A stretch of 64,000 bases of DNA from Phyllobates terribilis (taxonomy: Eukaryota), in NCBI RefSeq assembly GCF_046119375.1, contig NW_027362761.1, forward strand, positions 617,272,001 through 617,336,000, in the 5' to 3' direction. The position numbers and the translations under genes are program-made. Positions 28,601-54,983 of this stretch are shown in pieces (the stretch's first letter is position 1; the number at the start of each line of letters is the position of its first letter). The notes beneath the pieces were generated by a model, which made no database searches, was not told the origin of the DNA, and saw only the letters and a list, made by a program, of their open reading frames with translations.

Positions 28601-28708
28601 TTTTCTTTATTAATTCTTTTACACACCATTCACTGTGAGTTAGAATTATCATATTCTCTTTATTCTGTGGGTCACTATGATCTTGACAATGCCATATATA
28701 TATATATA

Positions 28709-29780: not shown

Positions 29781-30024
29781 TTATGTAGCCTTTTATGTTT
29801 TGTTACTTTTGCAAAAAGACTGACAAAAAAATGTTTTTTTGAGCTTCCCACATCTGATTTCCATAACTTTCTTTATTTTTCTGTATTGCTGTAGACAATC
29901 TCTTCATTACTAAGATGCAAGTTTTATAAATGTATTCATTTATTCGCAATATTTTTCAGGCTGCTTAATAGACATTTTTGATAAAAATATCTTATTGCAG
30001 TTTGTATGTCATAGACTCTACATG

Positions 30025-31647
30025 TCAAATCGTTTTGGGCTCTGAAGACACCTCGGCTTTCCACGGCAGGTGCAGATATTTCATAATGTCAATGGCCGAG
30101 CGTCTCTCACAGGCATTTATAGCCAGCAGCTCCCAGAACATTTCTCTGGCCTCCACTGATATATTCTTCCACTTCTCTGGAGCCTTTTCCAGATCCCTCT
30201 TCACCTGCCACCAGGCAAACCCCTTATAATCTTGGTCACGGCGCACTGCCCCATACCAAGGAAAGAGTCCAGAAAGGGCAAAATAAACAAGTACACCAAA
30301 GGCCCAGACATCGAGACTAGGATGGAGCAACAACTGTTCTCCTGGTCTTAAGCAGCAGAGCTCTGGAGCAGTGTAGGGCTTATACCAAGACACAGAAGGA
30401 ACATATGTGCCCTGGAGCCTGGTGAGGCCAAAGTCTGCCAGTTTTATCCAGTGACATTCTGCATCCATCAAAAGAATATTATTCGGCTTGATATCCCGAT
30501 GAACCATTCCTCTGTTGTGCATAAAGTCCAGAGCACTGGCGATCTGAGGAGCACAACGCTTCAACATGTCCTCCTGCATGCCGACCTAAGAAAGACAACA
30601 CAGGAGATCACACAGCTGAACAACAGACTGGAGAACATATCTAATAGAAAAGGACAGAAGACTTGTAGACATCTTCTACTAATGGATATTATTCCTGAAA
30701 TCATCAGTTCTACTCTGCTCTTCATTAGTTATATTCAGTTATGTGAGATTTCAACTAATAATTAAATATACCTCACATAGAGGATGATACCCAGCTCACA
30801 CATTCTCCTGGATGCTAAACCTGCCTAGTTATAGGGGCCCCATAGTGCTGCATACCGAAATATGAGTTTAATAACTCTGGGGAAATAGGATGATGTTTCC
30901 CATCAGATCTTTAAAAGTGGCCACCAATTTATCCAAAAATAATTTGAATAATGCTTAGAATTTGTAAAAGTGGAAAACAACTGCATGAGATCTTACTTTA
31001 GGTTTAAGGATGGACTGGAGATTTCCCGCCGGTGCCATTTCCTGAGCAAACACAAAATCCATACTGGTATGGAAGAAGATGTCGTGAGTAAGGATGATGT
31101 TCTGGTGGCAGCTGAGGGTTTGTGAAATGCAATATTCCAGGAAGAAGTTGTCTCCTGGAGTCTTCTTCTTTGCCATCATTTTTAGAGCCATGGTCTGTCC
31201 TGTTGGAAAGACATTATAATTGTTAATATGTATCACCATCATATTCCATAACACCGTCAAAACCATACAAAAAACCTGATCAATAACATTACACAGGAGT
31301 AGTCACAAGATTAGAAGATAGATGTGCAGAATACTAATCATGTGCTGTAGATAGGATAAAGCTAGAGTCATACTTAGTCATACAGTATGTCAGGGTACAA
31401 GGAGCTTTCATTTCATCTGAAACACCCTGATGGAACAAACATCATCATAGTCATCATCCATCATCATCTCACCTGAATGTTTGTGTTTTCCCATGTGTAC
31501 CTTTCCATAAGATCCAGTTCCAAGTTCTAGAAAAAGTTCAAAGTGGTCGGTCACTTCCATCATCTTCAGGTTCTTGGAAGTCTCTGATATCAGATGAAGA
31601 AGGTGTTTTGCCATGTTCTTGTTCCCTTCCTTGATGTGGGCGGCCAT
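30025..31647 (-). CDS. SBK1-like: SBK1-like Ser/Thr protein kinase, copy 1 (312 aa; coding exons 31647-31473, 31199-30997, 30585-30025)
   Basis: GT-AG introns (CAG|GTGAG phase 1, AAA|GTAAG phase 0) join an open frame with GTGSYG, ALK, alphaC Glu, HRDIKPNN, DFG, APE, DVWAFG and ERR. Intron positions and the motifs FVFAQE.APAG.L, ALDFMH and LADFG match SBK1 as recalled. This is a family-level assignment, not orthology. Confidence 0.9.
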
Positions 31648-31870
31648 TCTGAATAAAATGAAATTAGATATGCCATTGAATATAGCATGATACATCTTCC
31701 AGACCTGTAATAACATATTGTAATCCCCACGTGTAAACTGTGGCTATAAACACACAATTGTATAATAGTCTGCGGTCACTTTGTTAATATTCCAGCATTG
31801 TATAATTCCCCAGAGATCTGCAGTAATATCATCTACTATATCCTGTGCTATGTACTTATCATATATTCAC

Positions 31871-32140
31871 CTTACAGATGGAGATTGAAGATGTCTACTG
31901 CTACGGAAAGAGACGATAGTCAATGATGAACTCCTCCTGTACACCAACAAGTCTAAAACTTGCTGCTCCTCAGAGGCCAATGCTGAGTGCAAATAATTCC
32001 TGGAGTGGAGTAGATGTCACTGAGAGAAGGAGACAGGTTATATCTGGGAAGAGCAGGGAGATTGTTCATTAGTGGGACATTGTCATTGGCCAAAACTTAC
32101 TATCTCAATTTACATATGAACTGACATTGATAAGTGTTTG
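31871..32140 (-). promoter_or_regulatory. Candidate non-coding first exon and core promoter of kinase copy 1 (same in copies 2 and 3)
   Basis: Donor AAG|GTGAAT at 31871/31870, and no ATG in 32020-31871 on the minus strand. GATATAA at 32044-32038, CCAAT at 32089-32085, GATA sites at 32100-32105 and 32128-32133. The acceptor TTTCATTTTATTCAG lies 1 nt before the ATG. Confidence 0.4.
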
Positions 32141-33469
32141 GAGGGAGAATGCTGGGTGATTACATATGAATGGGGATTCCGGGTGAGGCTCAGGCACTGT
32201 ACACTATGACACTCACTATGGGAAATACCAGAAAATGTCCACCAGATCCTAAACCTTTACTATAGTTTAAGAAGCTAAAAAATTCAGTAAATTCCTGTGG
32301 TTTACCATACTATACTGTAAGAATATTGTCTATAAATTGTCAGAATAATTTGGTACAAATAGATTGGTCATATAAAATATATTTTCAGTTTCAAAATCCC
32401 CCAAAAATATATTTACAAGAGTCGGGGCCACTGACGTACCCCTTGCGGTACCAGCTGCCTGGTTATACAAGTGGCCCGCAAATTGAAAGGAACTATGTTT
32501 CAAAACAAAGCATAAGGATTGTCACCAGCTGCAATAATTCTTGCCAATAACACTAGTCCAGTATTTGTAAAAAATCTCATGTTTTTCATATATGAAGGAA
32601 TTTTCTTAACCAATGGGCAGGAAGTCCAGTCCAAATAATAAGACAGAGGCTCAGTAATTGAACTATGTTCAGCTTTTATAGGACTTCCAGATGGACTGTC
32701 TATACATTTATGGAATTTGGGAATAAAGTATCAGTATTGTTTTTTGGATATTCTACCATTAGTTTTTTAAAAAAAATTGTGTGATATTATCCACTTTCAA
32801 CTCTGTGTCTAAATAATGATCACAATCATTTTCTATGGGAATGTGTGGAATCAATTGAAAGATGTATAAGTATTTTTAGAACCTAATTTACAATTATATA
32901 TATATTATTTTTATATATAGTATACACTAGACATGACCACAATATTACCCTCCTTGTCTGCTGGCTTATAACTATAAGAAAAGTACAAAATGAGACAAGT
33001 ACTCATAGGGTATTATGGTATGATAGGTGGGTGGTGGTATGGGGTGAGGTGCTGCTTACCTGATGGAGTTGGGATTGCTCACCTCTATTATCTCCTTTTA
33101 AATTCACCAGCAATGTAATTTACATAATTGCATTACTTAATAGTCAAGCATGCAAGGCTACTACAGATAATATGAAACAAAAAGAAAAGACAACATACAA
33201 TGTATTATCACAAAGGTTGAAAGTATATTAGCATAAAGGTCATTTATTTTCAGTCACATAACACTTTTGTTTTTGAAAATATTATGATTTGTGTTGACTC
33301 ACAATTGCATGTTTTCCACCCAGTAAAAGGCACCGCTATGGGAACGGATTGAGCACCTCTTTGTGCAAATGTATTTTTGGTGTAGTGGGAGAATTTTCAT
33401 TTTTTTTATAAGGATTTGATTTTGTACACCATTGTCATTTTATTTAGGAAAGATTTATTGACGCATTTT

Positions 33470-35300
33470 TTGATCTGTTACAATGCCCATGTAAGTGTCA
33501 CGGGTGTGTCGCCACGAAGATCGTCGCGATTACACAGCCTGACTTCTCGCAGCTGACTTTTTGGTGCTTTGTGTTTTCGGCAGTGAGGGAGTTAATTCTC
33601 TCTCTCTCTGTGCTAGACGAGGTCCAGCCTCGCCCAGCTGCAATCAATGCTGCTGTAGTGAGACTCCTTCAAATGCCTGCTGGTCTGTTTGGGAAGTGTC
33701 GGTGAAAGCATTTCATGCAGACTAACAGAGCGGATCGTGGTATTTGGAGTTTCTGAGATAAGTGTATTTGGAGTGTTTTTTCCCTTCCTCGCTTTATCAT
33801 TTATCTCCTTTCCCGTTGGTCTTCCCTCTGTTGTAGTTGTGTAGTTTTTGTATGCAAGGTGGTTTTGGTTTTTCCCTTGTACTGTCTCGTTCGTCTAAGT
33901 ACTGTGTGTGGGCATATTATTACTTGTCCCCTTTTGTTGTGATCGGGGTCCTTCTCAGGACTAGATTACTTAGGTGCAGGGATCCTCAGGAGGTAGGGGT
34001 TACGCTGGCGGCCTGGACCTCTGTACCTTTAACAGTACCTCCAGGTTGAGGGATTAGTCAGGGCCCCAGCTTAGGGTCAGCTTAGGCCCCCTACCTCCAG
34101 TATACAGAGACAGCGTGACATTAAGTTACTCTATGTGGGGGAGACCACTTGGGATTTCAAAACATGAATCAATCATCATCGCTATACTATTAGGAAGAAG
34201 ACATTAGAATTGCCAGTACTGAAACATTTTGTAGAACTGAGGCATAAAGAAAAGGATCTTGGGTTTAGTATTATTGATCATGTTCCTTTGCTTAGGAGAG
34301 GAGGGAATAGGGAGAAATTATTGAAAAAGAAAGCATTAGAATGGATAAACAGATTCAATTCCCTCAAACCTAATGGTCTTAATGTAGATGTTAAATTGCA
34401 TACTTTGGTATAAGAAATTCCCTCTCTGGAAAAGATTCTCTTTTGTATAATCTGTGATATAACAAGAATTATTATTAACAAATTTTATGTTTTTATTTTT
34501 TACAGATCAAATGCACAAGAAATTTGGAATATTATGACTCAACCACCACATGACTAACGCTCTGATCTGAAATAAGTAATATGCAGTCAATTGGTTGCTC
34601 CTTAGTAGATGAATACGCATTTAGATTGAGTTATAATACTTTAATTGTCATTGGGAAGTAAACAAATTTTGATTACATTTTATGTATACTGTTTCTCTAA
34701 ATGGGTTAGTTACATATGTCAGCCCCAGTTGGGGGACTAAGAATGAGTAATTGATGTAATTTAATGCTTAAGTTGATTATATTCTGACCTTGTTATGTTT
34801 ATATTGATGTTTTGGATGTATGAAGACAGAGCAGCATTGAATGCTAGGAGAATAGTGTACAGGATTGATGTATTACATACATTGCACGTATAGACATGCG
34901 CAGAGAGGACGACTATGGCAAAATGGTGCTTCAGGCTTCAATATGTCCGTGCGTATAAGAGTGCAAATGCTGCCTCTATGTTATGTTCAATATTGACATG
35001 CGCCATGGCATTTCCGGGACATCGGTTTGCGGTGCGTATGGTCTGTTACATTGCGGTGGGGTGAGTCATAATTAATTATATTATATTTGAACTTGAATGC
35101 ACTTGAATTAAAATTTCACTATGAAATGTTGTAATTATATTAATTAATATTCTACAGTAATTGATGAACCTATATGTATATCACATGTGTATTATTGCAC
35201 TGCTTGATACATTTTCACACTTGGAATGAAATGTCGCCATCACAATGGGTCAATAAACCATTCACAGCTTTGACCTTGGAATGCTGCCTCTAATTTGTTG
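33470..35300 (+). mobile_element. 5'-truncated Penelope-like element (GIY-YIG endonuclease end plus 3' UTR), split by a solo LTR
   Basis: After removing the LTR it reads QCPCKLLYVGETTWDFKT*INHHRY...PVLKHF...RGGNREKLLKKKALEWINRFNSLKPNGLN. Confidence 0.8.
33496..34120. mobile_element. Solo LTR (625 bp), Gypsy-like
   Basis: Termini TGTCACG...CGTGACA; TSD GTAAG / TTAAG; empty site GTAAG at 49836-49840. Confidence 0.88.
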
Positions 35301-36267
35301 TATATCTTTCTATCTTTCTAACTATCTATTTCATAACAATCCATCTTTCTATCTATCTATTCTCTATCTTTTCACATTTGTAACACATAAAAATCTTTAA
35401 TTTCTAGTCTGCATTCTATACCGGTATGTGTCACACGTGCGGAAAACAGCTGTCACATGTATGTCAGCCGTGGTGTAGGAAAAAAATGAACATGTCTACT
35501 CGTGGGTCACACGGACACACGGTTCGTGTAAAAACATGGACATATGCACAACTGTATTCACAAGTACCAGACACACAGTCGTTTCAAGGGGTCCTAATTC
35601 TGCACAGATTACAAGAACTACTTCTTACAACCATGACTAAGAACAATCTCTTTGTACCCAACATATGTCCCAAAGAGTCAAGACTGCTTCAAAGCTCAAC
35701 TGTATTATTTAATACATCTTATATACGAGTGTGTAGCATCCTCCATTTACATCCTCTTAGACATCAAGTAGCAGAGTCTTTCCGTATTTTAAACAATATG
35801 AAGGGATGTACAAAATTGCATTGGGATATTGGGTTGATCCTTATTTGGGGAGAATGTCACCCCCATTGCCATCCCATCCAAGTGCATAAAATATGGAAGA
35901 ATGTAATAAATGTGTTAGCTTTTTATAACTGATAGATGTTTATTTCCTTTATAATCTTCAGTAATTCATGTTTTTTTTTTTACATCTGGTGGAAATGACT
36001 CTGCCATGTTACCTTCACCTCAGCATAGTAATAAGCATAGTAATCGGCCTGAAATTAAAGTGATAAAAAAATAATTTAAAGCAAGTGGAAAAATGTTCCA
36101 TGGAAACAAGTGTCCATATTAGCATCTCCATAGCTGGTAGCCCCAGTCTGATTCCTAATGTAACTAGCCTTCTATTCTTTTCTATTTAAATGTAATTACA
36201 GACACATCCAGTGACTTTAGACTGAGACTGGTGAAAGAACAAATATTAGATAAGGACATTTCTTTAA

Positions 36268-36747
36268 GGTACCGTCACACTTAGCGACCCTACAGCGATC
36301 CCGACAACGATACCACCTGGCAGGGATCGTTGCTGCATTGCTATGTGGTCGCTGGTGAGATGTCAAACAGTCAGATCTTCCCAACGACGCAGCAACGATG
36401 CGGCGACCCGTAGCGACCTGTATAACGATGTCGGCGGTCTTTGGGACCCTGTCACATAGCAGCTACTCTGACAATTCAGACCTCGATGAGGGACGACTTC
36501 TCAGTTCTGAGTCACCAACAAGGTCGTTGGTAAGGTGTCAAACACACCGATGCCTGCTACTCAGCGGGACCTCAACGATCAAAAAATGGTCCAGGCCATT
36601 CCGACACGACCAGCGATCTCACAGCAGGGGCCTGGTCGCTGCTACGTGTCAAGCGTAGCGAGATCGCTGCTGAGGTCGCTGTTGCGTTACAAAACTTGTG
36701 ACTCAGCAGCGATCTCGCTAGCGATCTCGCTTAGTGTGACGGGGGCT
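36268..36747. mobile_element. TTAA-target MITE (Kolobok/T2-like, 480 bp)
   Basis: TTAA|GGTACCGTCACAC...GTGTGACGGGGGCT|TTAA; empty site at ~51937-51940. Confidence 0.88.
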
Positions 36748-38178
36748 TTAAAACGTGTCTGTATCTCAGCAGAGGACACAATCAACAAGTTACTGTAAAG
36801 GATAATTGCATCAACATCTCACTATTTGGTCAAATGAAGTGATGAAATAGAGGGAAATAGATTTTTTTTTTAAATTGAGTGAAGAACATTTACCTGTAGT
36901 CACAAGAGATCTAATATAAATGTGTGCATATCATACAACAATATAAATACATCTAAATAAATTCCTTTTGTGTCACTGTTACCCTCTCCCACCCATATAC
37001 TGACTAGAGATGAGCAGATCTGATTTTTAGTCACATAACAGTTTTGTTTTAAAATATTATTGGAATTTGTGTTGACTCAAATGATTTTATTTTTAATTGC
37101 ATGTTTTCCACCAAGTAAATGGCACCGCTATGGGTACGGTTTGTGCACATGTGTCTGCAAATTTATTTTTGGTGTAATAGGAGAATTTCCATATTTTTGA
37201 TGAGCTGATTTTGTACACCAATCTTATTTTATTTTGGTGAAAGTTCATTGATTTAGTTTTATGGGACAGTGGAAAATGTTTTTTTATATGATTTTGTTTC
37301 TATCATTATATCTTGGCGTCACAGCCAGTCTTGGCCTTTAATACCAACCATTTTTATTCATGTCACATTAAATTAGTCATTCCTTTCTTGTTTTTTTGGC
37401 AATGTAATTGTATGAGGGCTTTTCTTTTCAGTATCAGTTGTATTTGTTAATTTAAACATTTTTATGTACATGTAACTTATTAGCATTCTTTTATTAGCTG
37501 TTTATGGGAGGAAAACAAATAAAATAGCAATTTTATCATTTGTTTGCATTTTAAAGTTTACGTTATCTGCTTGCTGCAAAGATAACGCATTAACTTCATT
37601 CAGTAGATCAGTACTAACATGGTGTTGATAAATTTGTAAAATTTTAATTATTTTTCTGCTTTGTACAATACACACTTGAAAAACACCTTTTTTGATGTTT
37701 CATAATTTTCTTTCAGTGGAGATGTATGAAGATTCATTTTTTGCATGACAATCTGCAGCTTTTATTGGTAACAGTTTGTTGTACGTGCAACTTTTTGATC
37801 CCTTTTTATACCAGCCTTTTAGAGGCAAAATGAACTAAAAAACTTCAAATTCTGAATTTGTTTTATTATTTTTTTAAACACCATTCACTGTGAAATATAA
37901 TTGTCATGTAATCTTTATTCTGTGGGCCACTATGATCATGACAATTCCTTATAGATTTTTATGTTTTGCTACTTTTGCGAAATGATGGACTTAAAAATTT
38001 TTTGGAGTCGTATATTCTGATACCCATAACTTATTTATTTTTTGGTTTTGCTCTAGACAAACACTCTTCATTACTAAGATACAAGTCTATTTTATTCATT
38101 TATTTATTTACAATACTTTCCAGGCTGCTTAATAGACATTATTGATTACAAAAAAAATATCATATTGCAGTTTGGATG

Positions 38179-39816
38179 TCATAGATTCTTCTCTTCAGGT
38201 TGTTTTGGGTCTGAAGACGCCTCGGCTTTCCACGGCAGGTGCAGATATTTCACAATGTCAATGGCCGAGCGTCTCTCACAGGCATTTATAGCCAGCAGCT
38301 CCCAGAACATTTCTCTGGCCTCCACTGATATATTCTTCCACTTCTCTGGAGCCTTTTCCAGATCCCTCTTCACCTGCCACCAGGCAAACCCCTTATAATC
38401 TTGGTCACGGCGCACTGCCCCATACCAAGGAAAGAGTCCAGAAAGGGCAAAATAAACAAGTACACCAAAGGCCCAGACATCGAGACTAGGATGGAGCAAC
38501 AACTGTTCTCCTGGTCTTAAGCAGCAGAGCTCTGGAGCAGTGTAGGGCTTATACCAGGACACAGAAGGAACATATGTGCCCTGGAGCCTGGTGAGGCCAA
38601 AGTCTGCCAGTTTTATCCAGTGACATTCTGCATCCATCAAAAGAATATTATTCGGCTTGATATCCCGATGAACCATTCCTCTGTTGTGCATAAAGTCCAG
38701 AGCACTGGCGATCTGAGGAGCACAACGCTTCAACATGTCCTCCTGCATGCCGACCTAAGAAAGACAACACAGGAGATCACACAGCTGAACAGCAGACTGG
38801 AGAACATATCTAATAAAAAAGGACAGAAGACTTGCAGACATCTTCTACTAATGGATATTATTCCTGAAATCATCAGTTCTACTCTGCTCTTCATTAGTTA
38901 TATTCAGTTATGTGAGATTTCAACTAATAATTAAATATACCTCACATAGAGGATGATACCCAGCTCACACATTCTCCTGGATGCTAAACCTGCCTAGTTA
39001 TAGGGGCCCCATAGTGCTGCATACCGAAATATGAGTTTAATAACTCTGGGGAAATAGGATGATGTTTCCCATCAGATCTTTAAAAGTGGCCACCAATTTA
39101 TCCAAAAATAATTTGAATAATGCTTAGAATTTGTAAAAGTGGAAAACAACTGCATGAGATCTTACTTTAGGTTTAAGGATGGACTGGAGATTTCCCGCCG
39201 GTGCCATTTCCTGAGCAAACACAAAATCCATACTGGTATGGAAGAAGATGTCGTGAGTAAGGATGATGTTCTGGTGGCAGCTGAGGGTTTGTGAAATGCA
39301 ATATTCCAGGAAGAAGTTGTCTCCTGGAGTCTTCTTCTTTGCCATCATTTTTAGAGCCATGGTCTGTCCTGTTGAAAAGACATTATAATTGTTAATATGT
39401 ATCACCATCGTATTCCATAACACCGTCAAAACCATACAAAAAACCTGATCAATAACATTACACAGGAGTAGTCACAAGATTAGAAGATAGATGTGCAGAA
39501 TACTAATCATGTGCTGTAGATAGGATAAAGCTAGAGTCATACTTAGTCATACAGTATGTCAGGGTACAAGGAGCTTTCATTTCATCTGAAACACCCTGAT
39601 GGAACAAACATCATCATAGTCATCATCCATCATCATCTCACCTGAATGTTTGTGTTTTCCCATGTGTACCTTTCCATAAGATCCAGTTCCAAGTTCTAGA
39701 AAAAGTTCAAAGTGGTCGGTCACTTCCATCATCTTCAGGTTCTTGGAAGTCTCTGATATCAGATGAAGAAGGTGTTTTGCCATGTTCTTGTTCCCTTCCT
39801 TGATGTGGGCGGCCAT
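38179..39816 (-). CDS. SBK1-like: SBK1-like Ser/Thr protein kinase, copy 2 (317 aa; coding exons 39816-39642, 39368-39166, 38754-38179)
   Basis: Same splice sites as copy 1, shifted by 8169 bp. Open frame with all catalytic motifs; C-terminus SSDPKQPEEKNL*. Confidence 0.92.
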
Positions 39817-41638
39817 TCTGAATAAAATGAAATTAGATATGCCATTGAATATAGCATGATACATCTTCCAGACCTGTAATAACATATTGTAATCCCCACG
39901 TGTAAACTGTGGCTATAAACACACAATTGTATAATAGTCTGCGGTCACTTTGTTAATATTCCAGCATTGTATAATTCCCCAGAGATCTGCAGTAATATCA
40001 TCTACTATATCCTGTGCTATGTACTTATCATATATTCACCTTACAGATGGAGATTGAAGATGTCTACTGCTACGGAAAGAGACGATAGTCAATGATGAAC
40101 TCCTCCTGTACACCAACAAGTCTAAAACTTGCTGCTCCTCAGAGGCCAATGCTGAGTGCAAATAATTCCTGGAGTGGAGTAGATGTCACTGAGAGAAGGA
40201 GACAGGTTATATCTGGGAAGAGCAGGGAGATTGTTCATTAGTGGGACATTGTCATTGGCCAAAACTTACTATCTCAATTTACATATGAACTGACATTGAT
40301 AAGTGTTTGGAGGGAGAATGCTGGGTGATTACATATGAATGGGGATTCCGGGTGAGGCTCAGGCACTGTACACTATGACACTCACTATGGGAAATACCAG
40401 AAAATGTCCACCAGATCCTAAACCTTTACTATAGTTTAAGAAGCTAAAAAATTCAGTAAATTCCTGTGGTTTACCATACTATACTGTAAGAATATTGTCT
40501 ATAAATTGTCAGAATAATTTGGTACAAATAGATTGGTCATATAAAATATATTTTCAGTTTCAAAATCCCCCAAAAATATATTTACAAGAGTCGGGGCCAC
40601 TGACGTACCCCTTGCGGTACCAGCTGCCTGGTTATACAAGTGGCCCGCAAATTGAAAGGAACTATGTTTCAAAACAAAGCATAAGGATTGTCACCAGCTG
40701 CAATAATTCTTGCCAATAACACTAGTCCAGTATTTGTAAAAAATCTCATGTTTTTCATATATGAAGGAATTTTCTTAACCAATGGGCAGGAAGTCCAGTC
40801 CAAATAATAAGACAGAGGCTCAGTAATTGAACTATGTTCAGCTTTTATAGGACTTCCAGATGGACTGTCTATACATTTATGGAATTTGGGAATAAAGTAT
40901 CAGTATTGTTTTTTGGATATTCTACCATTAGTTTTTTAAAAAAAATTGTGTGATATTATCCACTTTCAACTCTGTGTCTAAATAATGATCACAATCATTT
41001 TCTATGGGAATGTGTGGAATCAATTGAAAGATGTATAAGTATTTTTAGAACCTAATTTACAATTATATATATATTATTTTTATATATAGTATACACTAGA
41101 CATGACCACAATATTACCCTCCTTGTCTGCTGGCTTATAACTATAAGAAAAGTACAAAATGAGACAAGTACTCATAGGGTATTATGGTATGATAGGTGGG
41201 TGGTGGTATGGGGTGAGGTGCTGCTTACCTGATGGAGTTGGGATTGCTCACCTCTATTATCTCCTTTTAAATTCACCAGCAATGTAATTTACATAATTGC
41301 ATTACTTAATAGTCAAGCATGCAAGGCTACTACAGATAATATGAAACAAAAAGAAAAGACAACATACAATGTATTATCACAAAGGTTGAAAGTATATTAG
41401 CATAAAGGTCATTTATTTTCAGTCACATAACACTTTTGTTTTTGAAAATATTATGATTTGTGTTGACTCACAATTGCATGTTTTCCACCCAGTAAAAGGC
41501 ACCGCTATGGGAACGGATTGAGCACCTCTTTGTGCAAATGTATTTTTGGTGTAGTGGGAGAATTTTCATTTTTTTTATAAGGATTTGATTTTGTACACCA
41601 TTGTCATTTTATTTAGGAAAGATTTATTGACGCATTTT

Positions 41639-43469
41639 TTGATCTGTTACAATGCCCATGTAAGTGTCACGGGTGTGTCGCCACGAAGATCGTCGCGATT
41701 ACACAGCCTGACTTCTCGCAGCTGACTTTTTGGTGCTTTGTGTTTTCGGCAGTGAGGGAGTTAATTCTCTCTCTCTCTGTGCTAGACGAGGTCCAGCCTC
41801 GCCCAGCTGCAATCAATGCTGCTGTAGTGAGACTCCTTCAAATGCCTGCTGGTCTGTTTGGGAAGTGTCGGTGAAAGCATTTCATGCAGACTAACAGAGC
41901 GGATCGTGGTATTTGGAGTTTCTGAGATAAGTGTATTTGGAGTGTTTTTTCCCTTCCTCGCTTTATCATTTATCTCCTTTCCCGTTGGTCTTCCCTCTGT
42001 TGTAGTTGTGTAGTTTTTGTATGCAAGGTGGTTTTGGTTTTTCCCTTGTACTGTCTCGTTCGTCTAAGTACTGTGTGTGGGCATATTATTACTTGTCCCC
42101 TTTTGTTGTGATCGGGGTCCTTCTCAGGACTAGATTACTTAGGTGCAGGGATCCTCAGGAGGTAGGGGTTACGCTGGCGGCCTGGACCTCTGTACCTTTA
42201 ACAGTACCTCCAGGTTGAGGGATTAGTCAGGGCCCCAGCTTAGGGTCAGCTTAGGCCCCCTACCTCCAGTATACAGAGACAGCGTGACATTAAGTTACTC
42301 TATGTGGGGGAGACCACTTGGGATTTCAAAACATGAATCAATCATCATCGCTATACTATTAGGAAGAAGACATTAGAATTGCCAGTACTGAAACATTTTG
42401 TAGAACTGAGGCATAAAGAAAAGGATCTTGGGTTTAGTATTATTGATCATGTTCCTTTGCTTAGGAGAGGAGGGAATAGGGAGAAATTATTGAAAAAGAA
42501 AGCATTAGAATGGATAAACAGATTCAATTCCCTCAAACCTAATGGTCTTAATGTAGATGTTAAATTGCATACTTTGGTATAAGAAATTCCCTCTCTGGAA
42601 AAGATTCTCTTTTGTATAATCTGTGATATAACAAGAATTATTATTAACAAATTTTATGTTTTTATTTTTTACAGATCAAATGCACAAGAAATTTGGAATA
42701 TTATGACTCAACCACCACATGACTAACGCTCTGATCTGAAATAAGTAATATGCAGTCAATTGGTTGCTCCTTAGTAGATGAATACGCATTTAGATTGAGT
42801 TATAATACTTTAATTGTCATTGGGAAGTAAACAAATTTTGATTACATTTTATGTATACTGTTTCTCTAAATGGGTTAGTTACATATGTCAGCCCCAGTTG
42901 GGGGACTAAGAATGAGTAATTGATGTAATTTAATGCTTAAGTTGATTATATTCTGACCTTGTTATGTTTATATTGATGTTTTGGATGTATGAAGACAGAG
43001 CAGCATTGAATGCTAGGAGAATAGTGTACAGGATTGATGTATTACATACATTGCACGTATAGACATGCGCAGAGAGGACGACTATGGCAAAATGGTGCTT
43101 CAGGCTTCAATATGTCCGTGCGTATAAGAGTGCAAATGCTGCCTCTATGTTATGTTCAATATTGACATGCGCCATGGCATTTCCGGGACATCGGTTTGCG
43201 GTGCGTATGGTCTGTTACATTGCGGTGGGGTGAGTCATAATTAATTATATTATATTTGAACTTGAATGCACTTTAATTAAAATTTCACTATGAAATGTTG
43301 TAATTATATTAATTAATATTCTACAGTAATTGATGAACCTATATGTATATCACATGTGTATTATTGCACTGCTTGATACATTTTCACACTTGGAATGAAA
43401 TGTCGCCATCACAATGGGTCAATAAACCATTCACAGCTTTGACCTTGGAATGCTGCCTCTAATTTGTTG
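41639..43469 (+). mobile_element. Penelope-like remnant (duplicate of 33470-35300)
   Basis: Copy at +8169 bp. Confidence 0.8.
41665..42289. mobile_element. Solo LTR (duplicate of 33496-34120)
   Basis: Copy at +8169 bp with the same termini and TSD. Confidence 0.88.
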
Positions 43470-44436
43470 TATATCTTTCTATCTTTCTAACTATCTATTT
43501 CATAACAATCCATCTTTCTATCTATCTATTCTCTATCTTTTCACATTTGTAACACATAAAAATCTTTAATTTCTAGTCTGCATTCTATACCGGTATGTGT
43601 CACACGTGCGGAAAACAGCTGTCACATGTATGTCAGCCGTGGTGTAGGAAAAAAATGAACATGTCTACTCGTGGGTCACACGGACACACGGTTCGTGTAA
43701 AAACATGGACATATGCACAACTGTATTCACAAGTACCAGACACACAGTCGTTTCAAGGGGTCCTAATTCTGCACAGATTACAAGAACTACTTCTTACAAC
43801 CATGACTAAGAACAATCTCTTTGTACCCAACATATGTCCCAAAGAGTCAAGACTGCTTCAAAGCTCAACTGTATTATTTAATACATCTTATATACGAGTG
43901 TGTAGCATCCTCCATTTACATCCTCTTAGACATCAAGTAGCAGAGTCTTTCCGTATTTTAAACAATATGAAGGGATGTACAAAATTGCATTGGGATATTG
44001 GGTTGATCCTTATTTGGGGAGAATGTCACCCCCATTGCCATCCCATCCAAGTGCATAAAATATGGAAGAATGTAATAAATGTGTTAGCTTTTTATAACTG
44101 ATAGATGTTTATTTCCTTTATAATCTTCAGTAATTCATGTTTTTTTTTTTACATCTGGTGGAAATGACTCTGCCATGTTACCTTCACCTCAGCATAGTAA
44201 TAAGCATAGTAATCGGCCTGAAATTAAAGTGATAAAAAAATAATTTAAAGCAAGTGGAAAAATGTTCCATGGAAACAAGTGTCCATATTAGCATCTCCAT
44301 AGCTGGTAGCCCCAGTCTGATTCCTAATGTAACTAGCCTTCTATTCTTTTCTATTTAAATGTAATTACAGACACATCCAGTGACTTTAGACTGAGACTGG
44401 TGAAAGAACAAATATTAGATAAGGACATTTCTTTAA

Positions 44437-44916
44437 GGTACCGTCACACTTAGCGACCCTACAGCGATCCCAACAACGATACGACCTGGCAGGGATCGTT
44501 GCTGCATTGCTATGTGGTCGCTGGTGAGATGTCAAACAGTCAGATCTTCCCAACGACGCAGCAACGATGCGGCGACCCGTAGCGACCTGTATAACGATGT
44601 CGGCGGTCTTTGGGACCCTGTCACATAGCAGCTACTCTGACAATTCAGACCTCGATGAGGGACGACTTCTCAGTTCTGAGTCACCAACAAGGTCGTTGGT
44701 AAGGTGTCAAACACACCGATGCCTGCTACTCAGCGGGACCTCAACGATCAAAAAATGGTCCAGGCCATTCCGACACGACCAGCGATCTCACAGCAGGGGC
44801 CTGGTCGCTGCTACGTGTCAAACGTAGCGAGATCGCTGCTGAGGTCGCTGTTGCGTTACAAAACTTGTGACTCAGCAGCGATCTCGCTAGCGATCTCGCT
44901 TAGTGTGACGGGGGCT
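44437..44916. mobile_element. TTAA-target MITE (duplicate of 36268-36747)
   Basis: Copy at +8169 bp with TTAA flanks. Confidence 0.88.
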
Positions 44917-46347
44917 TTAAAACGTGTCTGTATCTCAGCAGAGGACACAATCAACAAGTTACTGTAAAGGATAATTGCATCAACATCTCACTATTTGGTC
45001 AAATGAAGTGATGAAATAGAGGGAAATAGATTTTTTTTTTAAATTGAGTGAAGAACATTTACCTGTAGTCACAAGAGATCTAATATAAATGTGTGCATAT
45101 CATACAACAATATAAATACATCTAAATAAATTCCTTTTGTGTCACTGTTACCCTCTCCCACCCATATACTGACTAGAGATGAGCAGATCTGATTTTTAGT
45201 CACATAACAGTTTTGTTTTAAAATATTATTGGAATTTGTGTTGACTCAAATGATTTTATTTTTAATTGCATGTTTTCCACCAAGTAAATGGCACCGCTAT
45301 GGGTACGGTTTGTGCACATGTGTCTGCAAATTTATTTTTGGTGTAATAGGAGAATTTCCATATTTTTGATGAGCTGATTTTGTACACCAATCTTATTTTA
45401 TTTTGGTGAAAGTTCATTGATTTAGTTTTATGGGACAGTGGAAAATGTTTTTTTATATGATTTTGTTTCTATCATTATATCTTGGCGTCACAGCCAGTCT
45501 TGGCCTTTAATACCAACCATTTTTATTCATGTCACATTAAATTAGTCATTCCTTTCTTGTTTTTTTGGCAATGTAATTGTATGAGGGCTTTTCTTTTCAG
45601 TATCAGTTGTATTTGTTAATTTAAACATTTTTATGTACATGTAACTTATTAGCATTCTTTTATTAGCTGTTTATGGGAGGAAAACAAATAAAATAGCAAT
45701 TTTATCATTTGTTTGCATTTTAAAGTTTACGTTATCTGCTTGCTGCAAAGATAACGCATTAACTTCATTCAGTAGATCAGTACTAACATGGTGTTGATAA
45801 ATTTGTAAAATTTTAATTATTTTTCTGCTTTGTACAATACACACTTGAAAAACACCTTTTTTGATGTTTCATAATTTTCTTTCAGTGGAGATGTATGAAG
45901 ATTCATTTTTTGCATGACAATCTGCAGCTTTTATTGGTAACAGTTTGTTGTACGTGCAACTTTTTGATCCCTTTTTATACCAGCCTTTTAGAGGCAAAAT
46001 GAACTAAAAAACTTCAAATTCTGAATTTGTTTTATTATTTTTTTAAACACCATTCACTGTGAAATATAATTGTCATGTAATCTTTATTCTGTGGGCCACT
46101 ATGATCATGACAATTCCTTATAGATTTTTATGTTTTGCTACTTTTGCGAAATGATGGACTTAAAAATTTTTTGGAGTCGTATATTCTGATACCCATAACT
46201 TATTTATTTTTTGGTTTTGCTCTAGACAAACACTCTTCATTACTAAGATACAAGTCTATTTTATTCATTTATTTATTTACAATACTTTCCAGGCTGCTTA
46301 ATAGACATTATTGATTACAAAAAAAATATCATATTGCAGTTTGGATG

Positions 46348-47991
46348 TCATAGATTCTTCTCTTCAGGTTGTTTTGGGTCTGAAGACGCCTCGGCTTTCC
46401 ACGGCAGGTGCAGATATTTCACAATGTCAATGGCCGAGCGTCTCTCACAGGCATTTATAGCCAGCAGCTCCCAGAACATTTCTCTGGCCTCCACTGATAT
46501 ATTCTTCCACTTCTCTGGAGCCTTTTCCAGATCCCTCTTCACCTGCCACCAGGCAAACCCCTTATAATCTTGGTCACGGCGCACTGCCCCATACCAAGGA
46601 AAGAGTCCAGAAAGGGCAAAATAAACAAGTACACCAAAGGCCCAGACATCGAGACTAGGATGGAGCAACAACTGTTCTCCTGGTCTTAAGCAGCAGAGCT
46701 CTGGAGCAGTGTAGGGCTTATACCAGGACACAGAAGGAACATATGTGCCCTGGAGCCTGGTGAGGCCAAAGTCTGCCAGTTTTATCCAGTGACATTCTGC
46801 ATCCATCAAAAGAATATTATTCGGCTTGATATCCCGATGAACCATTCCTCTGTTGTGCATAAAGTCCAGAGCACTGGCGATCTGAGGAGCACAACGCTTC
46901 AACATGTCCTCCTGCATGCCGACCTAAGAAAGACAACACAGGAGATCACACAGCTGAACAGCAGACTGGAGAACATATCTAATAGAAAAGGACAGAAGAC
47001 TTGCAGACATCTTCTACTAATGGATATTATTCCTGAAATCATCAGTTCTACTCTGCTCTTCATTAGTTATATTCAGTTATGTGAGATTTCAACTAATAAT
47101 TAAATATACCTCACATAGAGGATGATACCCAGCTCACACATTCTCCTGGATGCTAAACCTGCCTAGTTATAGGGGCCCCATAGTGCTGCATACCGAAATA
47201 TGAGTTTAATAACTCTGGGGAAATAGGATGATGTTTCCCATCAGATCTTTAAAAGTGGCCACCAATTTATCCAAAAATAATTTGAATAATGCTTAGAATT
47301 TGTAAAAGTGGAAAACAACTGCATGAGATCTTACTTTAGGTTTAAGGATGGACTGGAGATTTCCCGCCGGTGCCATTTCCTGAGCAAACACAAAATCCAT
47401 ACTGGTATGGAAGAAGATGTCGTGAGTAAGGATGATGTTCTGGTGGCAGCTGAGGGTTTGTGAAATGCAATATTCCAGGAAGAAGTTGTCTCCTGGAGTC
47501 TTCTTCTTTGCCATCATTTTTAGAGCCATGGTCTGTCCTGTTGAAAAGACATTATAATTGTTAATATGTATCACCATCGTATTCCATAACACCGTCAAAA
47601 CCATACAAAAAACCTGATCAATAACATTACACAGGAGTAGTCACAAGATTAGAAGATAGATGTGCAGAATACTAATCATGTGCTGTAGATAGGATAAAGC
47701 TAGAGTCATACTTAGTCATACAGTATGTCAGGGTACAAGGAGCTTTCATTTCATCTGAAACACCCTGATGGAACAAACATCATCAAGTCATCATCCATCA
47801 TCTATCATCATCTCACCTGAATGTTTGTGTTTTCCCATGTGTACCTTTCCATAAGATCCAGTTCCAAGTTCTAGAAAAAGTTCAAAGTGGTCGGTCACTT
47901 CCATCATCTTCAGGTTCTTGGAAGTCTCTGATATCAGATGAAGAAGGTGTTTTGCCATGTTCTTGTTCCCTTCCTTGATGTGGGCGGCCAT
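46348..47991 (-). CDS. SBK1-like: SBK1-like Ser/Thr protein kinase, copy 3 (317 aa; coding exons 47991-47817, 47537-47335, 46923-46348)
   Basis: Same exon structure as copy 2, with the first coding intron 6 bp longer. The ORF-track translations of the exons match copy 2. Confidence 0.92.
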
Positions 47992-49816
47992 TCTGAATAA
48001 AATGAAATTAGATATGCCATTGAATATAGCATGATACATCTTCCAGACCTGTAATAACATATTGTAATCCCCGCGTGTAAACTGTGGCTATAAACACACA
48101 ATTGTATAATAGTCTGCGGTCACTTTGTTAATATTCCAGCATTGTATAATTCCCCAGAGATCTGCAGTAATATTATCTACTATATCCTGTGCTATGTACT
48201 TATCATATATTCACCTTACAGATGGAGATTGAAGATGTCTACTGCTACGGAAAGAGACGATAGTCAATGATGAACTCCTCCTGTACACCAACAAGTCTAA
48301 AACTTGCTGCTCCTCAGAGGCCAATACTGAGTGCAAATAATTCCTGGAGTGGAGTAGATGTCACTGAGAGAAGGAGACAGGTTATATCTGGGAAGAGCAG
48401 GGAGATTGTTCATTAGTGGGACATTGTCATTGGCCAAAACTTACTATCTCAATTTACATATGAACTGACATTGATAAGTGTTTGGAGGGAGAATGCTGGG
48501 TGATTACATATGAATGGGGATTCCGGGTGAGGCTCAGGCACTGTACACTATGACACTCACTATGGGAAATACCAGAAAATGTCCACCAGATCCTAAACCT
48601 TTACTATAGTTTAAGAAGCTAAAAAATTCAGTAAATTCCTGTGGTTTACCATACTATACTGTAAGAATATTGTCTATAAATTGTCAGAATAATTTGGTAC
48701 AAATAGATTGGTCATATAAAATATATTTTCAGTTTCAAAATCCCCCAAAAATATATTTACAAGAGTCGGGGCCACTGACGTACCCCTTGCGGTACCAGCT
48801 GCCTGGTTATACAAGTGGCCCGCAAATTGAAAGGAACTATGTTTCAAAACAAAGCATAAGGATTGTCACCAGCTGCAATAATTCTTGCCAATAACACTAG
48901 TCCAGTATTTGTAAAAAATCTCATGTTTTTCATATATGAAGGAATTTTCTTAACCAATGGGCAGGAAGTCCAGTCCAAATAATAAGACAGAGGCTCAGTA
49001 ATTGAACTATGTTCAGCTTTTATAGGACTTCCAGATGGACTGTCTATACATTTATGGAATTTGGGAATAAAGTATCAGTATTGTTTTTTGGATATTCTAC
49101 CATTAGTTTTAAAAAAAAAATTGTGTGATATTATCCGCTCTCAACTCTGTGTCTAAATAATGATCACAATCATTTTCTATGGGAATGTGTGGAATCAATT
49201 GAAAGATGTATAAGTATTTTTAGAACCTAATTTACAATTATATATATATTATTTTTATATATAGTATACACTAGACATGACCACAATATTACCATCCTTG
49301 TCTGCTGGCTTATAACTATAAGAAAAGTACAAAATGAGACAAGTACTCATAGGGTATTATGGTATGATAGGTGGGTGGTGGTATGGGGTGAGGTGCTGCT
49401 TACCTGATGGAGTTGGGATTGTTCACCTCTATTATCTCCTTTTAAATTCACCAGCAATGTAATTTACATAATTGCATTACTTAACAGTCAAGCATGCAAG
49501 GCTACTACAGATAATATGAAACAAAAAGAAAAGACAACATACAATGTATTATCACAAAGGTTGAAAGTATATTAGCATAAAGGTCATTTATTTTCAGTCA
49601 CATAACACTTTTGTTTTTGAAAATATTATGATTTGTGTTGACTCACAATTGCATGTTTTCCACCCAGTAAAAGGCACCGCTATGGGAACGGACTGAGCAC
49701 CTCTTTGTGCAAATGTATTTTTGGTGTAGTGGGAGAATTTTCATTTTTTTTTATAAGGATTTGATTTTGTACACCATTGTCATTTTATTTAGGAAAGATT
49801 TATTGACGCATTTTTT

Positions 49817-51016
49817 GATCTGTTACAATGCCCATGTAAGTTACTCTATGTGGGGGAGACTACTTGGGATTTCAAAACAAGAATCAATCATCATCGCTAT
49901 ACTATTAGGAAGAAGACATTAGAATTGCCAGTACTGAAACATTTTGTATAACTGAGGCATAAAGAAAAGGATCTTGGGTTTAGTATTATTGATCATGTTA
50001 CTTTATTTAGGAGAGGAGAAAATAAGGAGAAATTATTGAAAAAGAAAGAATTAGAATGGATAAACAGATTCAATTCCCTCAAACCTAATGGTCTTAATGT
50101 AGATTTTAAATTGCATACTTTGGTATAAGAAATTCCCTCTCTGGAAAAGATTCTCTTTTGTATAATCTGTGATATAACAAGAATTATTATTAACAAATTT
50201 TAGGTTTTTATTTTTTACATATCAAATGCACAAGAAATTTGGAATATTATGACTCAACCCATCACATGACGAACGCTCTGATCTGAAATAAGTAATATAC
50301 AGTCAATTGGTTGCTCCTTAGTAGATGAATACGCATTTAGATTGCGTTATAATACTTTAATTGTCATTGGGAAGTAAACAAATTATGATTACATTTTATG
50401 TATACTGTTTCTCTGAATGGGTTAGTTACATATGTCAGCCCCAGTTGGGGGACTAAGAATGAGTAATTGATGTAATTTAATGCTTAAGTTGATTATATTT
50501 TTACCTTGTTATGTTTATATTGATGTTTTGGATGTATGAAGACAGAGCAGCATTGAATGCTAGGAGAATAGTGTACAGGATTGATGTATTACATACATTG
50601 CACGTATAGACATGCGCAGAGAGGACGACTATGGCAAAATGGCGCTTCAGGCTTCAATAGGTCCGTGCGCATAAGAGTGGAAATGCTGCCTCTATGTTAT
50701 GTTCAATATTGACATGCGCCATGGCATTTCCGGGACATAGGTTTGCGGTGCGTATGGTCTGTTACATTGCGGTGGGGTGAGTTATAATTAACTATATTAT
50801 ATTTGCACTTGAATGCACTTTTATTAAAATTTCACTATGAAATGTTGTAATTATATTAATTAATATTCTACAGTAATTGATGAACCTATATGTATATCAC
50901 ATGTGTATTATTGCACTGCTTGATACATTTTCACACTTGGAATGAAATGTCGCCATCACAATGGGTCAATAAACCATTCACAGCTTTGACCTTGGAATGC
51001 TGCCTCTAATTTGTTG
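49817..51016 (+). mobile_element. Penelope-like remnant without the LTR insertion
   Basis: Contiguous QCPCKLLYVGETTWDFKTRINHHRY...ELEWINRFNSLKPNGLNVDF. Confidence 0.8.
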
Positions 51017-54782: not shown

Positions 54783-54983
54783 NNNNNNNNNNNNNNNNNN
54801 NNNNNNNNNNNNNNNNNNNNNNNNNNNNNNNNNNNNNNNNNNNNNNNNNNNNNNNNNNNNNNNNNNNNNNNNNNNNNNNNNNNNNNNNNNNNNNNNNNNN
54901 NNNNNNNNNNNNNNNNNNNNNNNNNNNNNNNNNNNNNNNNNNNNNNNNNNNNNNNNNNNNNNNNNNNNNNNNNNNNNNNNNNN
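54783..54983. other. Assembly gap (~200 N)
   Basis: Run of N flanked on both sides by Tc1 termini. Confidence 0.99.

What the first reader, a model, noticed from the sequence alone, without database searches (positions are those of the whole stretch)
30025..47991. Tandem, apparently expanding array of compact SBK1-like kinase genes
Seen: three intact minus-strand genes with canonical GT-AG sites and all kinase catalytic motifs, at an 8169-bp period. They are the only host genes in an otherwise TE-saturated 64 kb. Knowledge: SBK1 is a small vertebrate kinase family, usually low-copy, and these exon boundaries match it. Inference: this is a lineage-specific, birth-and-death amplified kinase cluster, possibly dosage- or tissue-specialised, and the best candidate for an undescribed system in the window.
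Basis: partly seen in the sequence, partly recalled or inferred. Interest (0 to 1): 0.75.

Follow-up and report, generated by a model that had tools for sequence, protein, structure and literature searches.

The report
Three-copy frog SBK-like kinase array
The golden poison frog carries three head-to-tail copies of a small, fast-evolving, frog-specific protein kinase gene, the middle copy made very recently by one unequal crossover; gene catalogues already list the genes, so this is a tidy but ordinary case of tandem gene duplication.

Summary
Three intact three-exon kinase genes lie on the minus strand, 8169 bp apart. All have GT-AG introns and every catalytic motif. Copy 1 encodes 312 aa; copies 2 and 3 encode 317 aa.

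- **Already annotated.** The genes are RefSeq models of Phyllobates terribilis (XP_073494787, XP_073494914, XP_073495039, "SBK1-like").
- **Not the SBK1 ortholog.** That gene (415 aa, with a proline-rich tail) lies on another chromosome. The array genes belong to a frog-specific SBK clade with a long stem. It evolves about 30 times faster than SBK1, yet all catalytic residues are kept in 60 members.
- **Paralogs cluster by species.** Dendrobates tinctorius has at least 12 proteins of this clade on one scaffold.
- **Origin of the middle copy.** Unit 2 matches unit 3 on one side of a 205-bp interval in intron 1 and unit 1 on the other. It shows 5 differences since. This is the signature of one unequal crossover that turned two copies into three.
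- **Signs of an older array.** Diverged array edges and decayed flanking relics point to an older array that has been repeatedly homogenised.
- **Untested.** Expression and read-depth copy number could not be checked; only contigs were available.

This scan found a nine-copy SBK-like array before, 13.1 Mb upstream in the same genome. I found no paper on the family. Interest is modest.

The parts
29791..37956 (-). Tandem unit 1 (8166 bp), carrying gene copy 1
   Evidence: Self-BLAST. 99.87% identical to unit 2 from 30085 on, but about 78% identical in 29791-30084.
37957..46125 (-). Tandem unit 2 (8169 bp), a recombinant of unit 3 type (low coordinates) and unit 1 type (high coordinates)
   Evidence: 69 informative sites in 37969-39410 all match unit 3. 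About 1295 informative columns in 39616-45653 match unit 1, with one exception.
46126..52673 (-). Tandem unit 3 (shorter). It lacks 622 bp (41666-42287 of unit 2), the 484-bp high-copy element, and the last 470 bp of the unit tail.
30025..31647 (-). Gene copy 1 CDS: exons 31647-31473, 31199-30997, 30585-30025; 312 aa; equals RefSeq XP_073494787.1 (P0001)
   Evidence: Pfam Pkinase scores 97.7 bits on exon 3.
38179..39816 (-). Gene copy 2 CDS: exons 39816-39642, 39368-39166, 38754-38179; 317 aa; equals P0031 (XP_073494914.1 / XP_073495039.1)
46348..47991 (-). Gene copy 3 CDS: exons 47991-47817, 47537-47335, 46923-46348; 317 aa; protein identical to copy 2
39411..39615 (.). Interval holding the unequal-crossover point, inside intron 1 of copy 2
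   Evidence: the last unit-3-type site is 39410 and the first unit-1-type site is 39616.
37457..38249 (.). Head-to-tail junction (37956|37957), identical to the unit 2/3 junction region over 793 bp
   Evidence: Bridged without differences by contigs of runs X1, X5 and X6 (table 8, records 6, 11, 21).
29791..30084 (-). Diverged 3' end and 3' flank of copy 1 (about 78% identical to the same part of units 2 and 3). It holds the 1-bp indel at 30040 that gives copy 1 its shorter C-terminus.
27532..28701 (.). Old diverged copy (74-76%) of the unit tail, left of the array. It is separated from 29791 by a 1089-bp insertion (28702-29790) that holds a minisatellite.
36262..36745 (.). 484-bp very high-copy interspersed element in the intergenic part of unit 1. 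The same element lies at 44431-44914 in unit 2 and is absent from unit 3.
   Evidence: (word depth 1e4-1e5; a joint skipping 484 bp in X1).
58340..63998 (.). Old diverged pieces (73-85%) of unit parts right of the array: 58340-58949, 59410-59584, 60579-61563, 63103-63998. No kinase remnant is present. They may be relics of older units or copies of interspersed repeats.
54783..54983 (.). Assembly gap (201 N), 2.1 kb beyond the end of unit 3; not filled

Best explanation
This is a real, young, three-unit head-to-tail array of a frog-specific SBK-family serine/threonine kinase gene in Phyllobates terribilis.

Each unit carries a complete three-coding-exon gene. The product is a kinase domain with a short N-terminal helix and almost no tail. 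It lacks the proline-rich SH3-binding tail of SBK1. It is most likely an active kinase, because every catalytic residue is conserved across the clade.

The array most likely grew from two units (today's units 1 and 3) to three by a single unequal crossover between misaligned units. The exchange point lies inside intron 1, so the middle gene has exon 1 and the promoter side from unit 1, and exons 2-3 and the 3' flank from unit 3.

Earlier rounds of the same process, plus gene conversion, kept the gene bodies nearly identical while the array edges and distal spacers diverged. That would explain why paralogs cluster by species across poison frogs.

Shown here: the anatomy, the recombinant mosaic, family placement, conservation of catalytic residues, and fast protein evolution. 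Inferred: kinase activity, the time of the event (about 0.06% divergence, so recent), and concerted evolution. Unknown: expression and biological role.
For: - **Anatomy and intact models:**
- **RefSeq identity:**
- **Recombinant middle unit:** one clean switch, with 69 sites against about 1295 columns and one exception. Only 5 differences have arisen since.
- **Junction in other samples:** contigs of three samples from two studies bridge the head-to-tail junction.
- **Graded divergence between units 1 and 3:** 0.5-0.75% in the gene and proximal upstream region, 2-4% in the distal spacer, and about 22% in the 3' flank.
- **Species-wise clustering of paralogs:**
- **Tandem spacing in D. tinctorius:** same strand, 11,075 bp.
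- **Clade A:** support 100/100 with stem length 0.87. The true SBK1, a second SBK1-like gene, and SBK2-like and SBK3-like genes of P. terribilis lie elsewhere.
- **Conserved catalytic core:** G43, G45, G48, D157, K159, N162, DFG, P200, E201, D218, W220 and R287 are invariant in 60 clade members.
- **Selection:** dN/dS of 0.36-0.42 on exon 3 among three related frog contigs.
- **Fold:** AlphaFold2 pLDDT 93.3; the nearest solved fold is the CHK1 kinase domain.
Against: - No read depth or long reads were available. All runs are kept as contigs.
- The two junction regions are identical over 793 bp. The junction contigs of other individuals therefore prove at least two units, not three.
- An assembler taking one extra turn through a two-unit repeat would produce the same recombinant middle unit.
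- The private letter of unit 2 at 38816 is not seen in any contig laid. Contigs do drop minor variants.
- No spliced transcript was seen. The one small putative RNA run gave only a 256-bp unspliced contig in intron 2.
- An assembly gap lies 2.1 kb from the array.
Confidence: 0.8

Rival explanations
1. The true locus has two units (1 and 3). The middle unit is an assembly artefact: an extra turn through the repeat graph, or haplotypes laid side by side.
For: - The middle unit is exactly unit 3 on one side and unit 1 on the other, with only 5 differences. That many could be allelic.
- The junction regions are identical.
- The private letter at 38816 is not found in contigs.
- An N gap lies nearby.
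Against: - Unit 2 is neither a positional allele of unit 1 nor of unit 3. Its 3' flank is of unit 3 type, and its distal spacer is of unit 1 type, including the 484-bp and 622-bp segments that unit 3 lacks.
- The array lies inside contiguous sequence, not at the gap.
- An 8-kb unit is within reach of the long reads that I assume were used for a chromosome-scale assembly. This is my inference; the read type was not checked.
Confidence: 0.12
2. Three old copies were homogenised by two separate gene-conversion tracts (unit 3 into the left of unit 2, unit 1 into the right of unit 2), rather than one unequal crossover creating unit 2.
For: The mosaic itself cannot tell a crossover from two abutting conversion tracts. 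Graded divergence between units 1 and 3 shows that conversion-like homogenisation has acted here.
Against: - It needs two tracts that together cover the whole 8.2-kb unit, meet within 205 bp, and have the same age. Differences since are 1 in 1455 bp and 4 in 6510 bp, both about 0.06%.
- One crossover explains all of this.
Confidence: 0.06
3. The copies are silent or decaying duplicates that look intact only because they are young.
For: No spliced RNA evidence was found. Copy 2 is only about 0.06% diverged from its parents. dN/dS in the clade is raised (0.36-0.42).
Against: - Units 1 and 3 differ by 2-4% in the distal spacer and about 22% in the 3' flank, yet both genes are intact.
- All catalytic residues are invariant across 60 clade members from Ascaphus to poison frogs.
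- dN/dS is well under 1.
Confidence: 0.1

Closest known systems
SBK1 (SH3 domain-binding kinase 1), the true ortholog in P. terribilis (P0192, XP_073504374.1)
   Same: Same kinase family. Both have an N-terminal helix before the kinase domain, the IPYTAPE / LDVWAFGV / FPW motifs and an intact catalytic core.
   Different: - About 41% identity.
- The array kinase is 312-317 aa against 415 aa.
- The array kinase has no roughly 90-aa tail with PxxP motifs and no conserved C-terminus.
- SBK1 is 99.5% identical between P. terribilis and Ranitomeya imitator; the array kinase is 84.8%.
- SBK1 is single-copy on another chromosome.
- The P+1 loop reads W-Y in place of G-T, and the catalytic loop KPNN in place of KPEN.
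SBK3 / SBK2 lineages (sauropsid SBK3, amphibian clade B; amphibian clade D = SBK2-like)
   Same: The best tree joins the frog clade with SBK3 plus its amphibian relatives (91/92). Aspartate at the KPxN position is shared with SBK3-type proteins.
   Different: - A long stem (0.87 changes per site) separates the frog clade.
- P. terribilis keeps separate SBK2-like (P0288) and SBK3-like (P0294) genes together on a 324-Mb chromosome.
- The placement is not decisive (AU p 0.25 for the SBK1 alternative).
Orthologous tandem arrays of the same clade in other poison frogs (Dendrobates tinctorius, Ranitomeya imitator, R. variabilis)
   Same: 84-87% identical proteins of 311-319 aa. The gene span is 1.65 kb. 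In D. tinctorius the neighbouring copies lie on the same strand, and paralogs there are nearly identical.
   Different: - Copy number: at least 12 proteins on one D. tinctorius scaffold, four loci encoding one identical protein; 4-5 proteins in each Ranitomeya species; 3 genes here.
- Period: 11,075 bp in D. tinctorius against 8169 bp here.
- Copies cluster by species.
Nine-copy SBK-like array 13.1 Mb upstream in the same genome (scan note s1-215396)
   Same: As reported by the earlier agent, it is a tandem array of a small three-exon SBK-like kinase gene on the same sequence record.
   Different: Not verified here. No further P. terribilis protein of this clade appeared in the word searches, so its relation to this array is open.
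CHK1 kinase domain (nearest solved fold)
   Same: Canonical bilobal kinase fold; TM-score 0.85 by target, rmsd about 3 A.
   Different: Only 26% identity. This is a fold neighbour, not a family relation. No SBK structure was found among solved chains.

Membership tests
Protein kinase superfamily (Pfam PF00069 Pkinase) | Profile match above the curated cut-off | tested here: met
   Exon 3 alone scores 97.1-97.7 bits against a cut-off of 31.7 in all three copies. Exon 2 alone scores 22.9 bits, below the cut-off as expected for a piece.
Protein kinase superfamily (Pfam PF00069 Pkinase) | Catalytic residues: GxGxxG, VAIK Lys, alphaC Glu, HRD Asp, catalytic-loop Lys and Asn, DFG, APE | tested here: met
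   All are present in the three copies. They are invariant or nearly so in 60 clade members and in the 75-sequence SBK alignment.
SBK family (SBK1/2/3) | Nearest relatives and tree position inside the SBK family | tested here: met
   All hits below the frog clade are named SBK1, SBK2 or SBK3. The clade nests among them in the trees.
SBK1 proper (orthology) | Falls in the SBK1 clade and is the species' SBK1 gene | tested here: not met
   P. terribilis SBK1 is P0192 on a 418-Mb chromosome. The SBK1 clade has 100/100 support and excludes the array kinase. A sister relation of the whole frog clade to the SBK1 group is not rejected (p-AU 0.253).
SBK1 proper (orthology) | Proline-rich C-terminal tail with PxxP motifs (the SH3-binding part) | tested here: not met
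   The tail after the kinase domain is 13 aa (copy 1) or 18 aa (copies 2, 3). Copy 1 has no PxxP motif. P0192 has PPVP, PRVP and PGQP in its tail.
SBK1 proper (orthology) | Same exon boundaries as SBK1 | not tested
   No genomic DNA of an SBK1 gene could be fetched; the frog assembly files were too large for the tool.
Tandem array made by unequal crossover | Head-to-tail units on one strand with a recombinant unit showing one switch of parentage | tested here: met
Tandem array made by unequal crossover | Copy number confirmed by read depth or by long reads spanning two junctions | not testable with these tools
   All runs offered are kept as contigs. Contigs bridge one junction type only.
Concerted evolution of a multigene array | Paralogs more alike within a species than orthologs between species; array edges more diverged than cores | tested here: met
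   Species-wise clades for P. terribilis, D. tinctorius and Ranitomeya. The 3' flank of unit 1 is about 78% identical, against 99.9% for the core. Rapid turnover (birth and death) could give the same tree.
Expressed gene | Spliced transcripts across the predicted junctions | tested here: inconclusive
   One small putative RNA run held only a 256-bp unspliced contig at 38932-39181. Logan contigs of relatives are unspliced genomic-type pieces.

The most novel reading that the evidence does not exclude
Frogs (possibly frogs plus salamanders, going by one long-branch axolotl sequence) may own a fifth SBK lineage with four unusual traits. It lost the SH3-binding tail. It changed the substrate-facing P+1 loop from G-T to W-Y/F. 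Its protein evolves about 30 times faster than SBK1. It is re-amplified or homogenised in tandem separately in each species, and no pipid member was listed. That pattern is typical of genes caught in reproductive or host-pathogen conflict, so the arrays could be copy-number-variable loci under such selection rather than neutral duplications.
Probability: 0.2. Interest if true: 0.55.

Novelty: new member of a known kind. Interest (0 to 1): 0.27.

Why it matters
On its own, this is one more recent tandem gene duplication, and it is already in RefSeq. It has two modest merits.

- The locus is a very clean natural example of array growth by one unequal crossover. The exchange point is pinned to 205 bp inside an intron, and the order of events can be read from a transposon insertion and two indels.
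- It belongs to a frog-specific, fast-evolving, repeatedly amplified SBK kinase clade that I found in no paper. No member from Xenopus or other pipoid frogs was listed in the searches, so it may be missing from the Xenopus model.

If the clade proves to be expressed in a particular tissue, such as germ line, skin or immune cells, it would be a candidate for lineage-specific signalling under conflict-type selection.

Tried and rejected
- **Ordinary SBK1 ortholog:** rejected. The species' SBK1, a second SBK1-like gene, and SBK2-like and SBK3-like genes were found elsewhere.
- **Further kinase copies or pseudogene remnants in the window:** none at E up to 10.
- **Read depth for copy number:** not possible, because all runs are contigs.
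- **RNA evidence:** only one unspliced contig. Logan contigs of relatives (L001-L003) turned out to be unspliced, with intron 2 present in L002.
- **Genomic DNA of the D. tinctorius, R. imitator and P. terribilis arrays:** No cross-species dN/dS for poison frogs and no SBK1 exon-boundary check were possible.
- **AU test of the frog clade with the SBK1 group:** not rejected (p 0.253). The SBK3 affinity stays a best guess.
- **Rfam and tRNA scans of the window:** nothing.
- **Literature:** five searches and one genome paper (PMC12208295) gave nothing on frog SBK-like arrays.
- **The nine-copy array of note s1-215396:** I could not tie it to any protein cluster seen.
- **The large profile search:** not run, because the word search already settled the family.
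- **Spliced model:** no exons were ever joined. Exons were searched one by one by reference. The full-length RefSeq proteins P0001 and P0031, which match the exons piece by piece, were used instead.


Full report
**What is there**

The window is from a 1.24-Gb chromosome record of the golden poison frog, Phyllobates terribilis (assembly GCA_046119375.1). Exon 3 of copy 1 is 100% identical to a RefSeq protein of that species.

Direct repeats with 8169-bp spacing and self-BLAST define three head-to-tail units:
- Unit 1: 29791-37956.
- Unit 2: 37957-46125.
- Unit 3: 46126-52673.

A 201-N gap lies at 54783-54983 and was left alone. tblastn with the three exon peptides finds each exon exactly three times and no further kinase remnant in the 64 kb.

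**Gene models**

On the minus strand each unit carries a gene of three coding exons. All have an ATG, GT-AG introns (273 or 279 nt, and 411 nt) and a TGA stop.
- Copy 1: 31647-31473, 31199-30997, 30585-30025.
- Copy 2: 39816-39642, 39368-39166, 38754-38179.
- Copy 3: 47991-47817, 47537-47335, 46923-46348.

Exons were searched one by one by reference. Each exon's peptide and the split codon were then matched piece by piece to the database proteins P0001 (312 aa, XP_073494787.1, copy 1) and P0031 (317 aa, XP_073494914.1 and XP_073495039.1, copies 2 and 3). Those two stored proteins served for all full-length work.

The public annotation calls the same three genes with the same spacing, and calls no other gene within 10 kb either side of copies 2 and 3. 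Two corrections apply: copy 1 encodes 312 aa, not 317, and the period for exon 1 of copy 3 is 8175.

**Surroundings**

The rest of the window is repeat-rich:
- A 29-nt G-rich satellite at 605-3410.
- 31-nt arrays at 8265-10486.
- A Ty3/gypsy RNaseH-integrase fragment at 12501-13436.
- A DDE_3 transposase fragment at 53881-54474.

No Rfam family or tRNA was found.

**What the protein is**

Exon 3 alone matches Pfam Pkinase at 97 bits. Solved structures match only at the level of CAMK-like kinase domains.

AlphaFold2 with a 75-sequence alignment gives a confident kinase fold (pLDDT 93.3, pTM 0.91). An N-terminal helix spans residues 2-25. The nearest solved fold is the CHK1 kinase domain.

In 60 proteins of the same clade the following are invariant or nearly so: the three G-loop glycines, the VAIK lysine, the alphaC glutamate, HRD aspartate, catalytic-loop lysine and asparagine, DFG, APE, D218, W220 and R287. 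I therefore take it for an active kinase. That is an inference, not an assay.

Two clade-specific changes stand out, and they agree with scan note s1-234868:
- The P+1 loop reads W-Y/F where other SBK proteins have G-T (46 and 45 of 60 members).
- The catalytic loop reads KP(N/D)N instead of KPEN.

The protein ends 13 to 18 residues after the kinase domain. The species' true SBK1 continues with a tail holding PPVP, PRVP and PGQP motifs.

**Family placement**

Word searches with exon 3 and with P0001 return a graded series of 'SBK1-like' proteins:
- 84-87% identity in other poison frogs.
- 70-78% in other hyloid frogs.
- 59-65% in ranoid frogs.
- 52-56% in Pelobates, Ascaphus, Discoglossus and Bombina.

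Everything else drops to 50% or less. Cluster look-ups show that P. terribilis has its own SBK family members elsewhere:
- SBK1 (P0192, 415 aa, on a 418-Mb chromosome).
- A second conserved SBK1-like gene (P0158).
- An SBK2-like gene (P0288) and an SBK3-like gene (P0294), together on a 324-Mb chromosome.

A careful maximum-likelihood tree of 56 proteins (quick versions) gives the frog clade 100/100 support on a stem of 0.87 changes per site. It joins that clade to SBK3 plus its amphibian relatives at 91/92. An AU test does not reject the alternative of grouping it with the SBK1 group (p 0.253). The firm result is that this is a separate frog lineage of the SBK family and not the SBK1 ortholog.

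One long-branch axolotl protein grouped with the clade in the first tree. No Xenopus, Hymenochirus or Rhinophrynus protein fell in it among those listed. That hints at loss in pipoid frogs but is not proof.

**Rate and selection**

Between P. terribilis and Ranitomeya imitator, SBK1 is 99.5% identical and the array kinase 84.8%. Against Ascaphus the figures are 93.9% and 56.1%.

Exon 3 of three related frog contigs from public runs gives dN/dS of 0.36-0.42. The clade is therefore constrained, but much less than a typical kinase. Overall positive selection is not shown.

**How the array arose**

Units 1 and 2 differ at only 10 positions from 30085 to 37956. They differ at 64 positions in 29791-30084, which is the last codons and the 3' flank.

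A three-way alignment shows one clean switch in unit 2:
- From 37969 to 39410, all 69 informative sites match unit 3. There is one private change, at 38816.
- From 39616 to 45653, about 1295 informative columns match unit 1, with one exception.

The switch lies within 39411-39615, inside intron 1. A crossover between a misaligned unit 3 and unit 1 in a two-unit array predicts exactly this middle unit: the low-coordinate part from unit 3 and the high-coordinate part from unit 1. Differences since are 1 in 1455 bp and 4 in 6510 bp, both about 0.06%. This points to one recent event. At roughly 1e-9 changes per site per year, a general figure and not measured here, the event is a few hundred thousand years old. 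That is within the range of segregating variation.

The order of earlier events can also be read. Units 1 and 2 share a 484-bp very high-copy element (36262-36745 and 44431-44914; word depth 1e4-1e5) and a 622-bp segment. Unit 3 lacks both.

Units 1 and 3 show graded divergence:
- 0.5-0.75% in the gene and the first 2 kb upstream.
- 2-4% further upstream.
- About 22% in the 3' flank.

An old 74-76% copy of the unit tail lies left of the array (27532-28701). It is split from 29791 by a 1089-bp insertion. Pieces 73-85% identical to unit parts lie to the right (58340-63998), without any kinase remnant. Together with the species-wise clustering of paralogs, this fits an old array kept homogeneous in its gene-bearing core by unequal exchange and conversion, with decayed units at its borders. 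The flanking pieces could also be copies of interspersed repeats; I could not decide.

**Is the array real?**

All public runs are kept as contigs, so depth could not be used.

Contigs of the likely source sample and of two other samples from another study bridge the head-to-tail junction at 37956|37957 without a difference. Tandem repetition therefore exists outside this assembly. However, the unit 1/2 and unit 2/3 junction regions are identical over 793 bp. This proves two or more units, not three.

An extra turn through a two-unit repeat during assembly would mimic the recombinant unit. I give that about 12%, for two reasons. The array lies inside contiguous sequence. Unit 2 is also not a positional allele of either neighbour.

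**Expression**

Expression is untested. One small putative RNA run held a single unspliced 256-bp contig in intron 2. Contigs of relatives are unspliced as well.

**Comparison and novelty**

- In Dendrobates tinctorius, four loci encode one identical protein of this clade. Eight more proteins of 90% or more identity lie on the same 7.2-Mb scaffold. Neighbouring copies sit on the same strand 11,075 bp apart.
- Ranitomeya imitator and R. variabilis have five and four such proteins, on chromosomes of 1.25 and 1.17 Gb.
- Three copies in P. terribilis is therefore unremarkable, and 'expanding' is not shown beyond the last event.
- The scan had already followed up a nine-copy SBK-like array 13.1 Mb upstream in this genome (note s1-215396). 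I could not link it to any protein cluster seen here.
- Five literature searches and the P. terribilis draft-genome paper (PMC12208295) gave nothing on these genes.

**Verdict**

This is a real and well-resolved but ordinary tandem duplication of an already annotated gene. It is a new member of a known kind. The one loose end of some interest is the frog-specific, fast-evolving SBK clade itself.

Noticed in passing
window 36262-36745 and 44431-44914: A 484-bp element with extreme copy number in the genome (contig word depth 1e4-1e5 against 10-20 around it). It ends in a 45-nt near-palindrome (36648-36740) and is absent from unit 3. There is no Rfam or tRNA match, so it is probably a short non-autonomous transposon.
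   Followed up: partly
window 28702-29790: A 1089-bp insertion that splits the old diverged unit tail from the 3' flank of copy 1. It holds a 38/72-nt minisatellite (28751-29059) of the same family as the arrays at 8265-10486.
   Followed up: partly
window 605-3410: A G-rich 29-nt satellite, about 91 copies, with GC skew +0.54. Long spurious ORFs run through it.
   Followed up: no
window 12501-13436 (+) and 53881-54474 (-): A Ty3/gypsy RNaseH plus integrase zinc-domain fragment, and a DDE_3 (Tc1-like) transposase fragment.
   Followed up: partly
window 31648-31900 (minus strand, upstream of the ATG of copy 1): The ATG is preceded by a pyrimidine tract and CAG two bases upstream (TTTTATTCAG|AATG). 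A GT-type donor-like site lies about 200 nt further up (CATCTGTAAG|GTGAAT). The gene may have an untranslated first exon; no RNA was available to test this.
   Followed up: no
proteins P0001/P0031 residues 161 and 193-195 (window 38530-38670 region in copy 2): The P+1 loop W-Y-K replaces G-T-I, and the catalytic loop KPNN replaces KPEN. W and Y/F are clade-wide (46 and 45 of 60 members), while the KPxN position is split N or D, 30 each. This corroborates scan note s1-234868.
   Followed up: yes
proteins P0083/P0114, P0081/P0105, P0082/P0199, P0288/P0294: The SBK3-like and SBK2-like genes of frogs lie on the same contig in Hymenochirus, Bombina, Hyla and P. terribilis. The frog-specific clade lies on a different, very large chromosome.
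   Followed up: no
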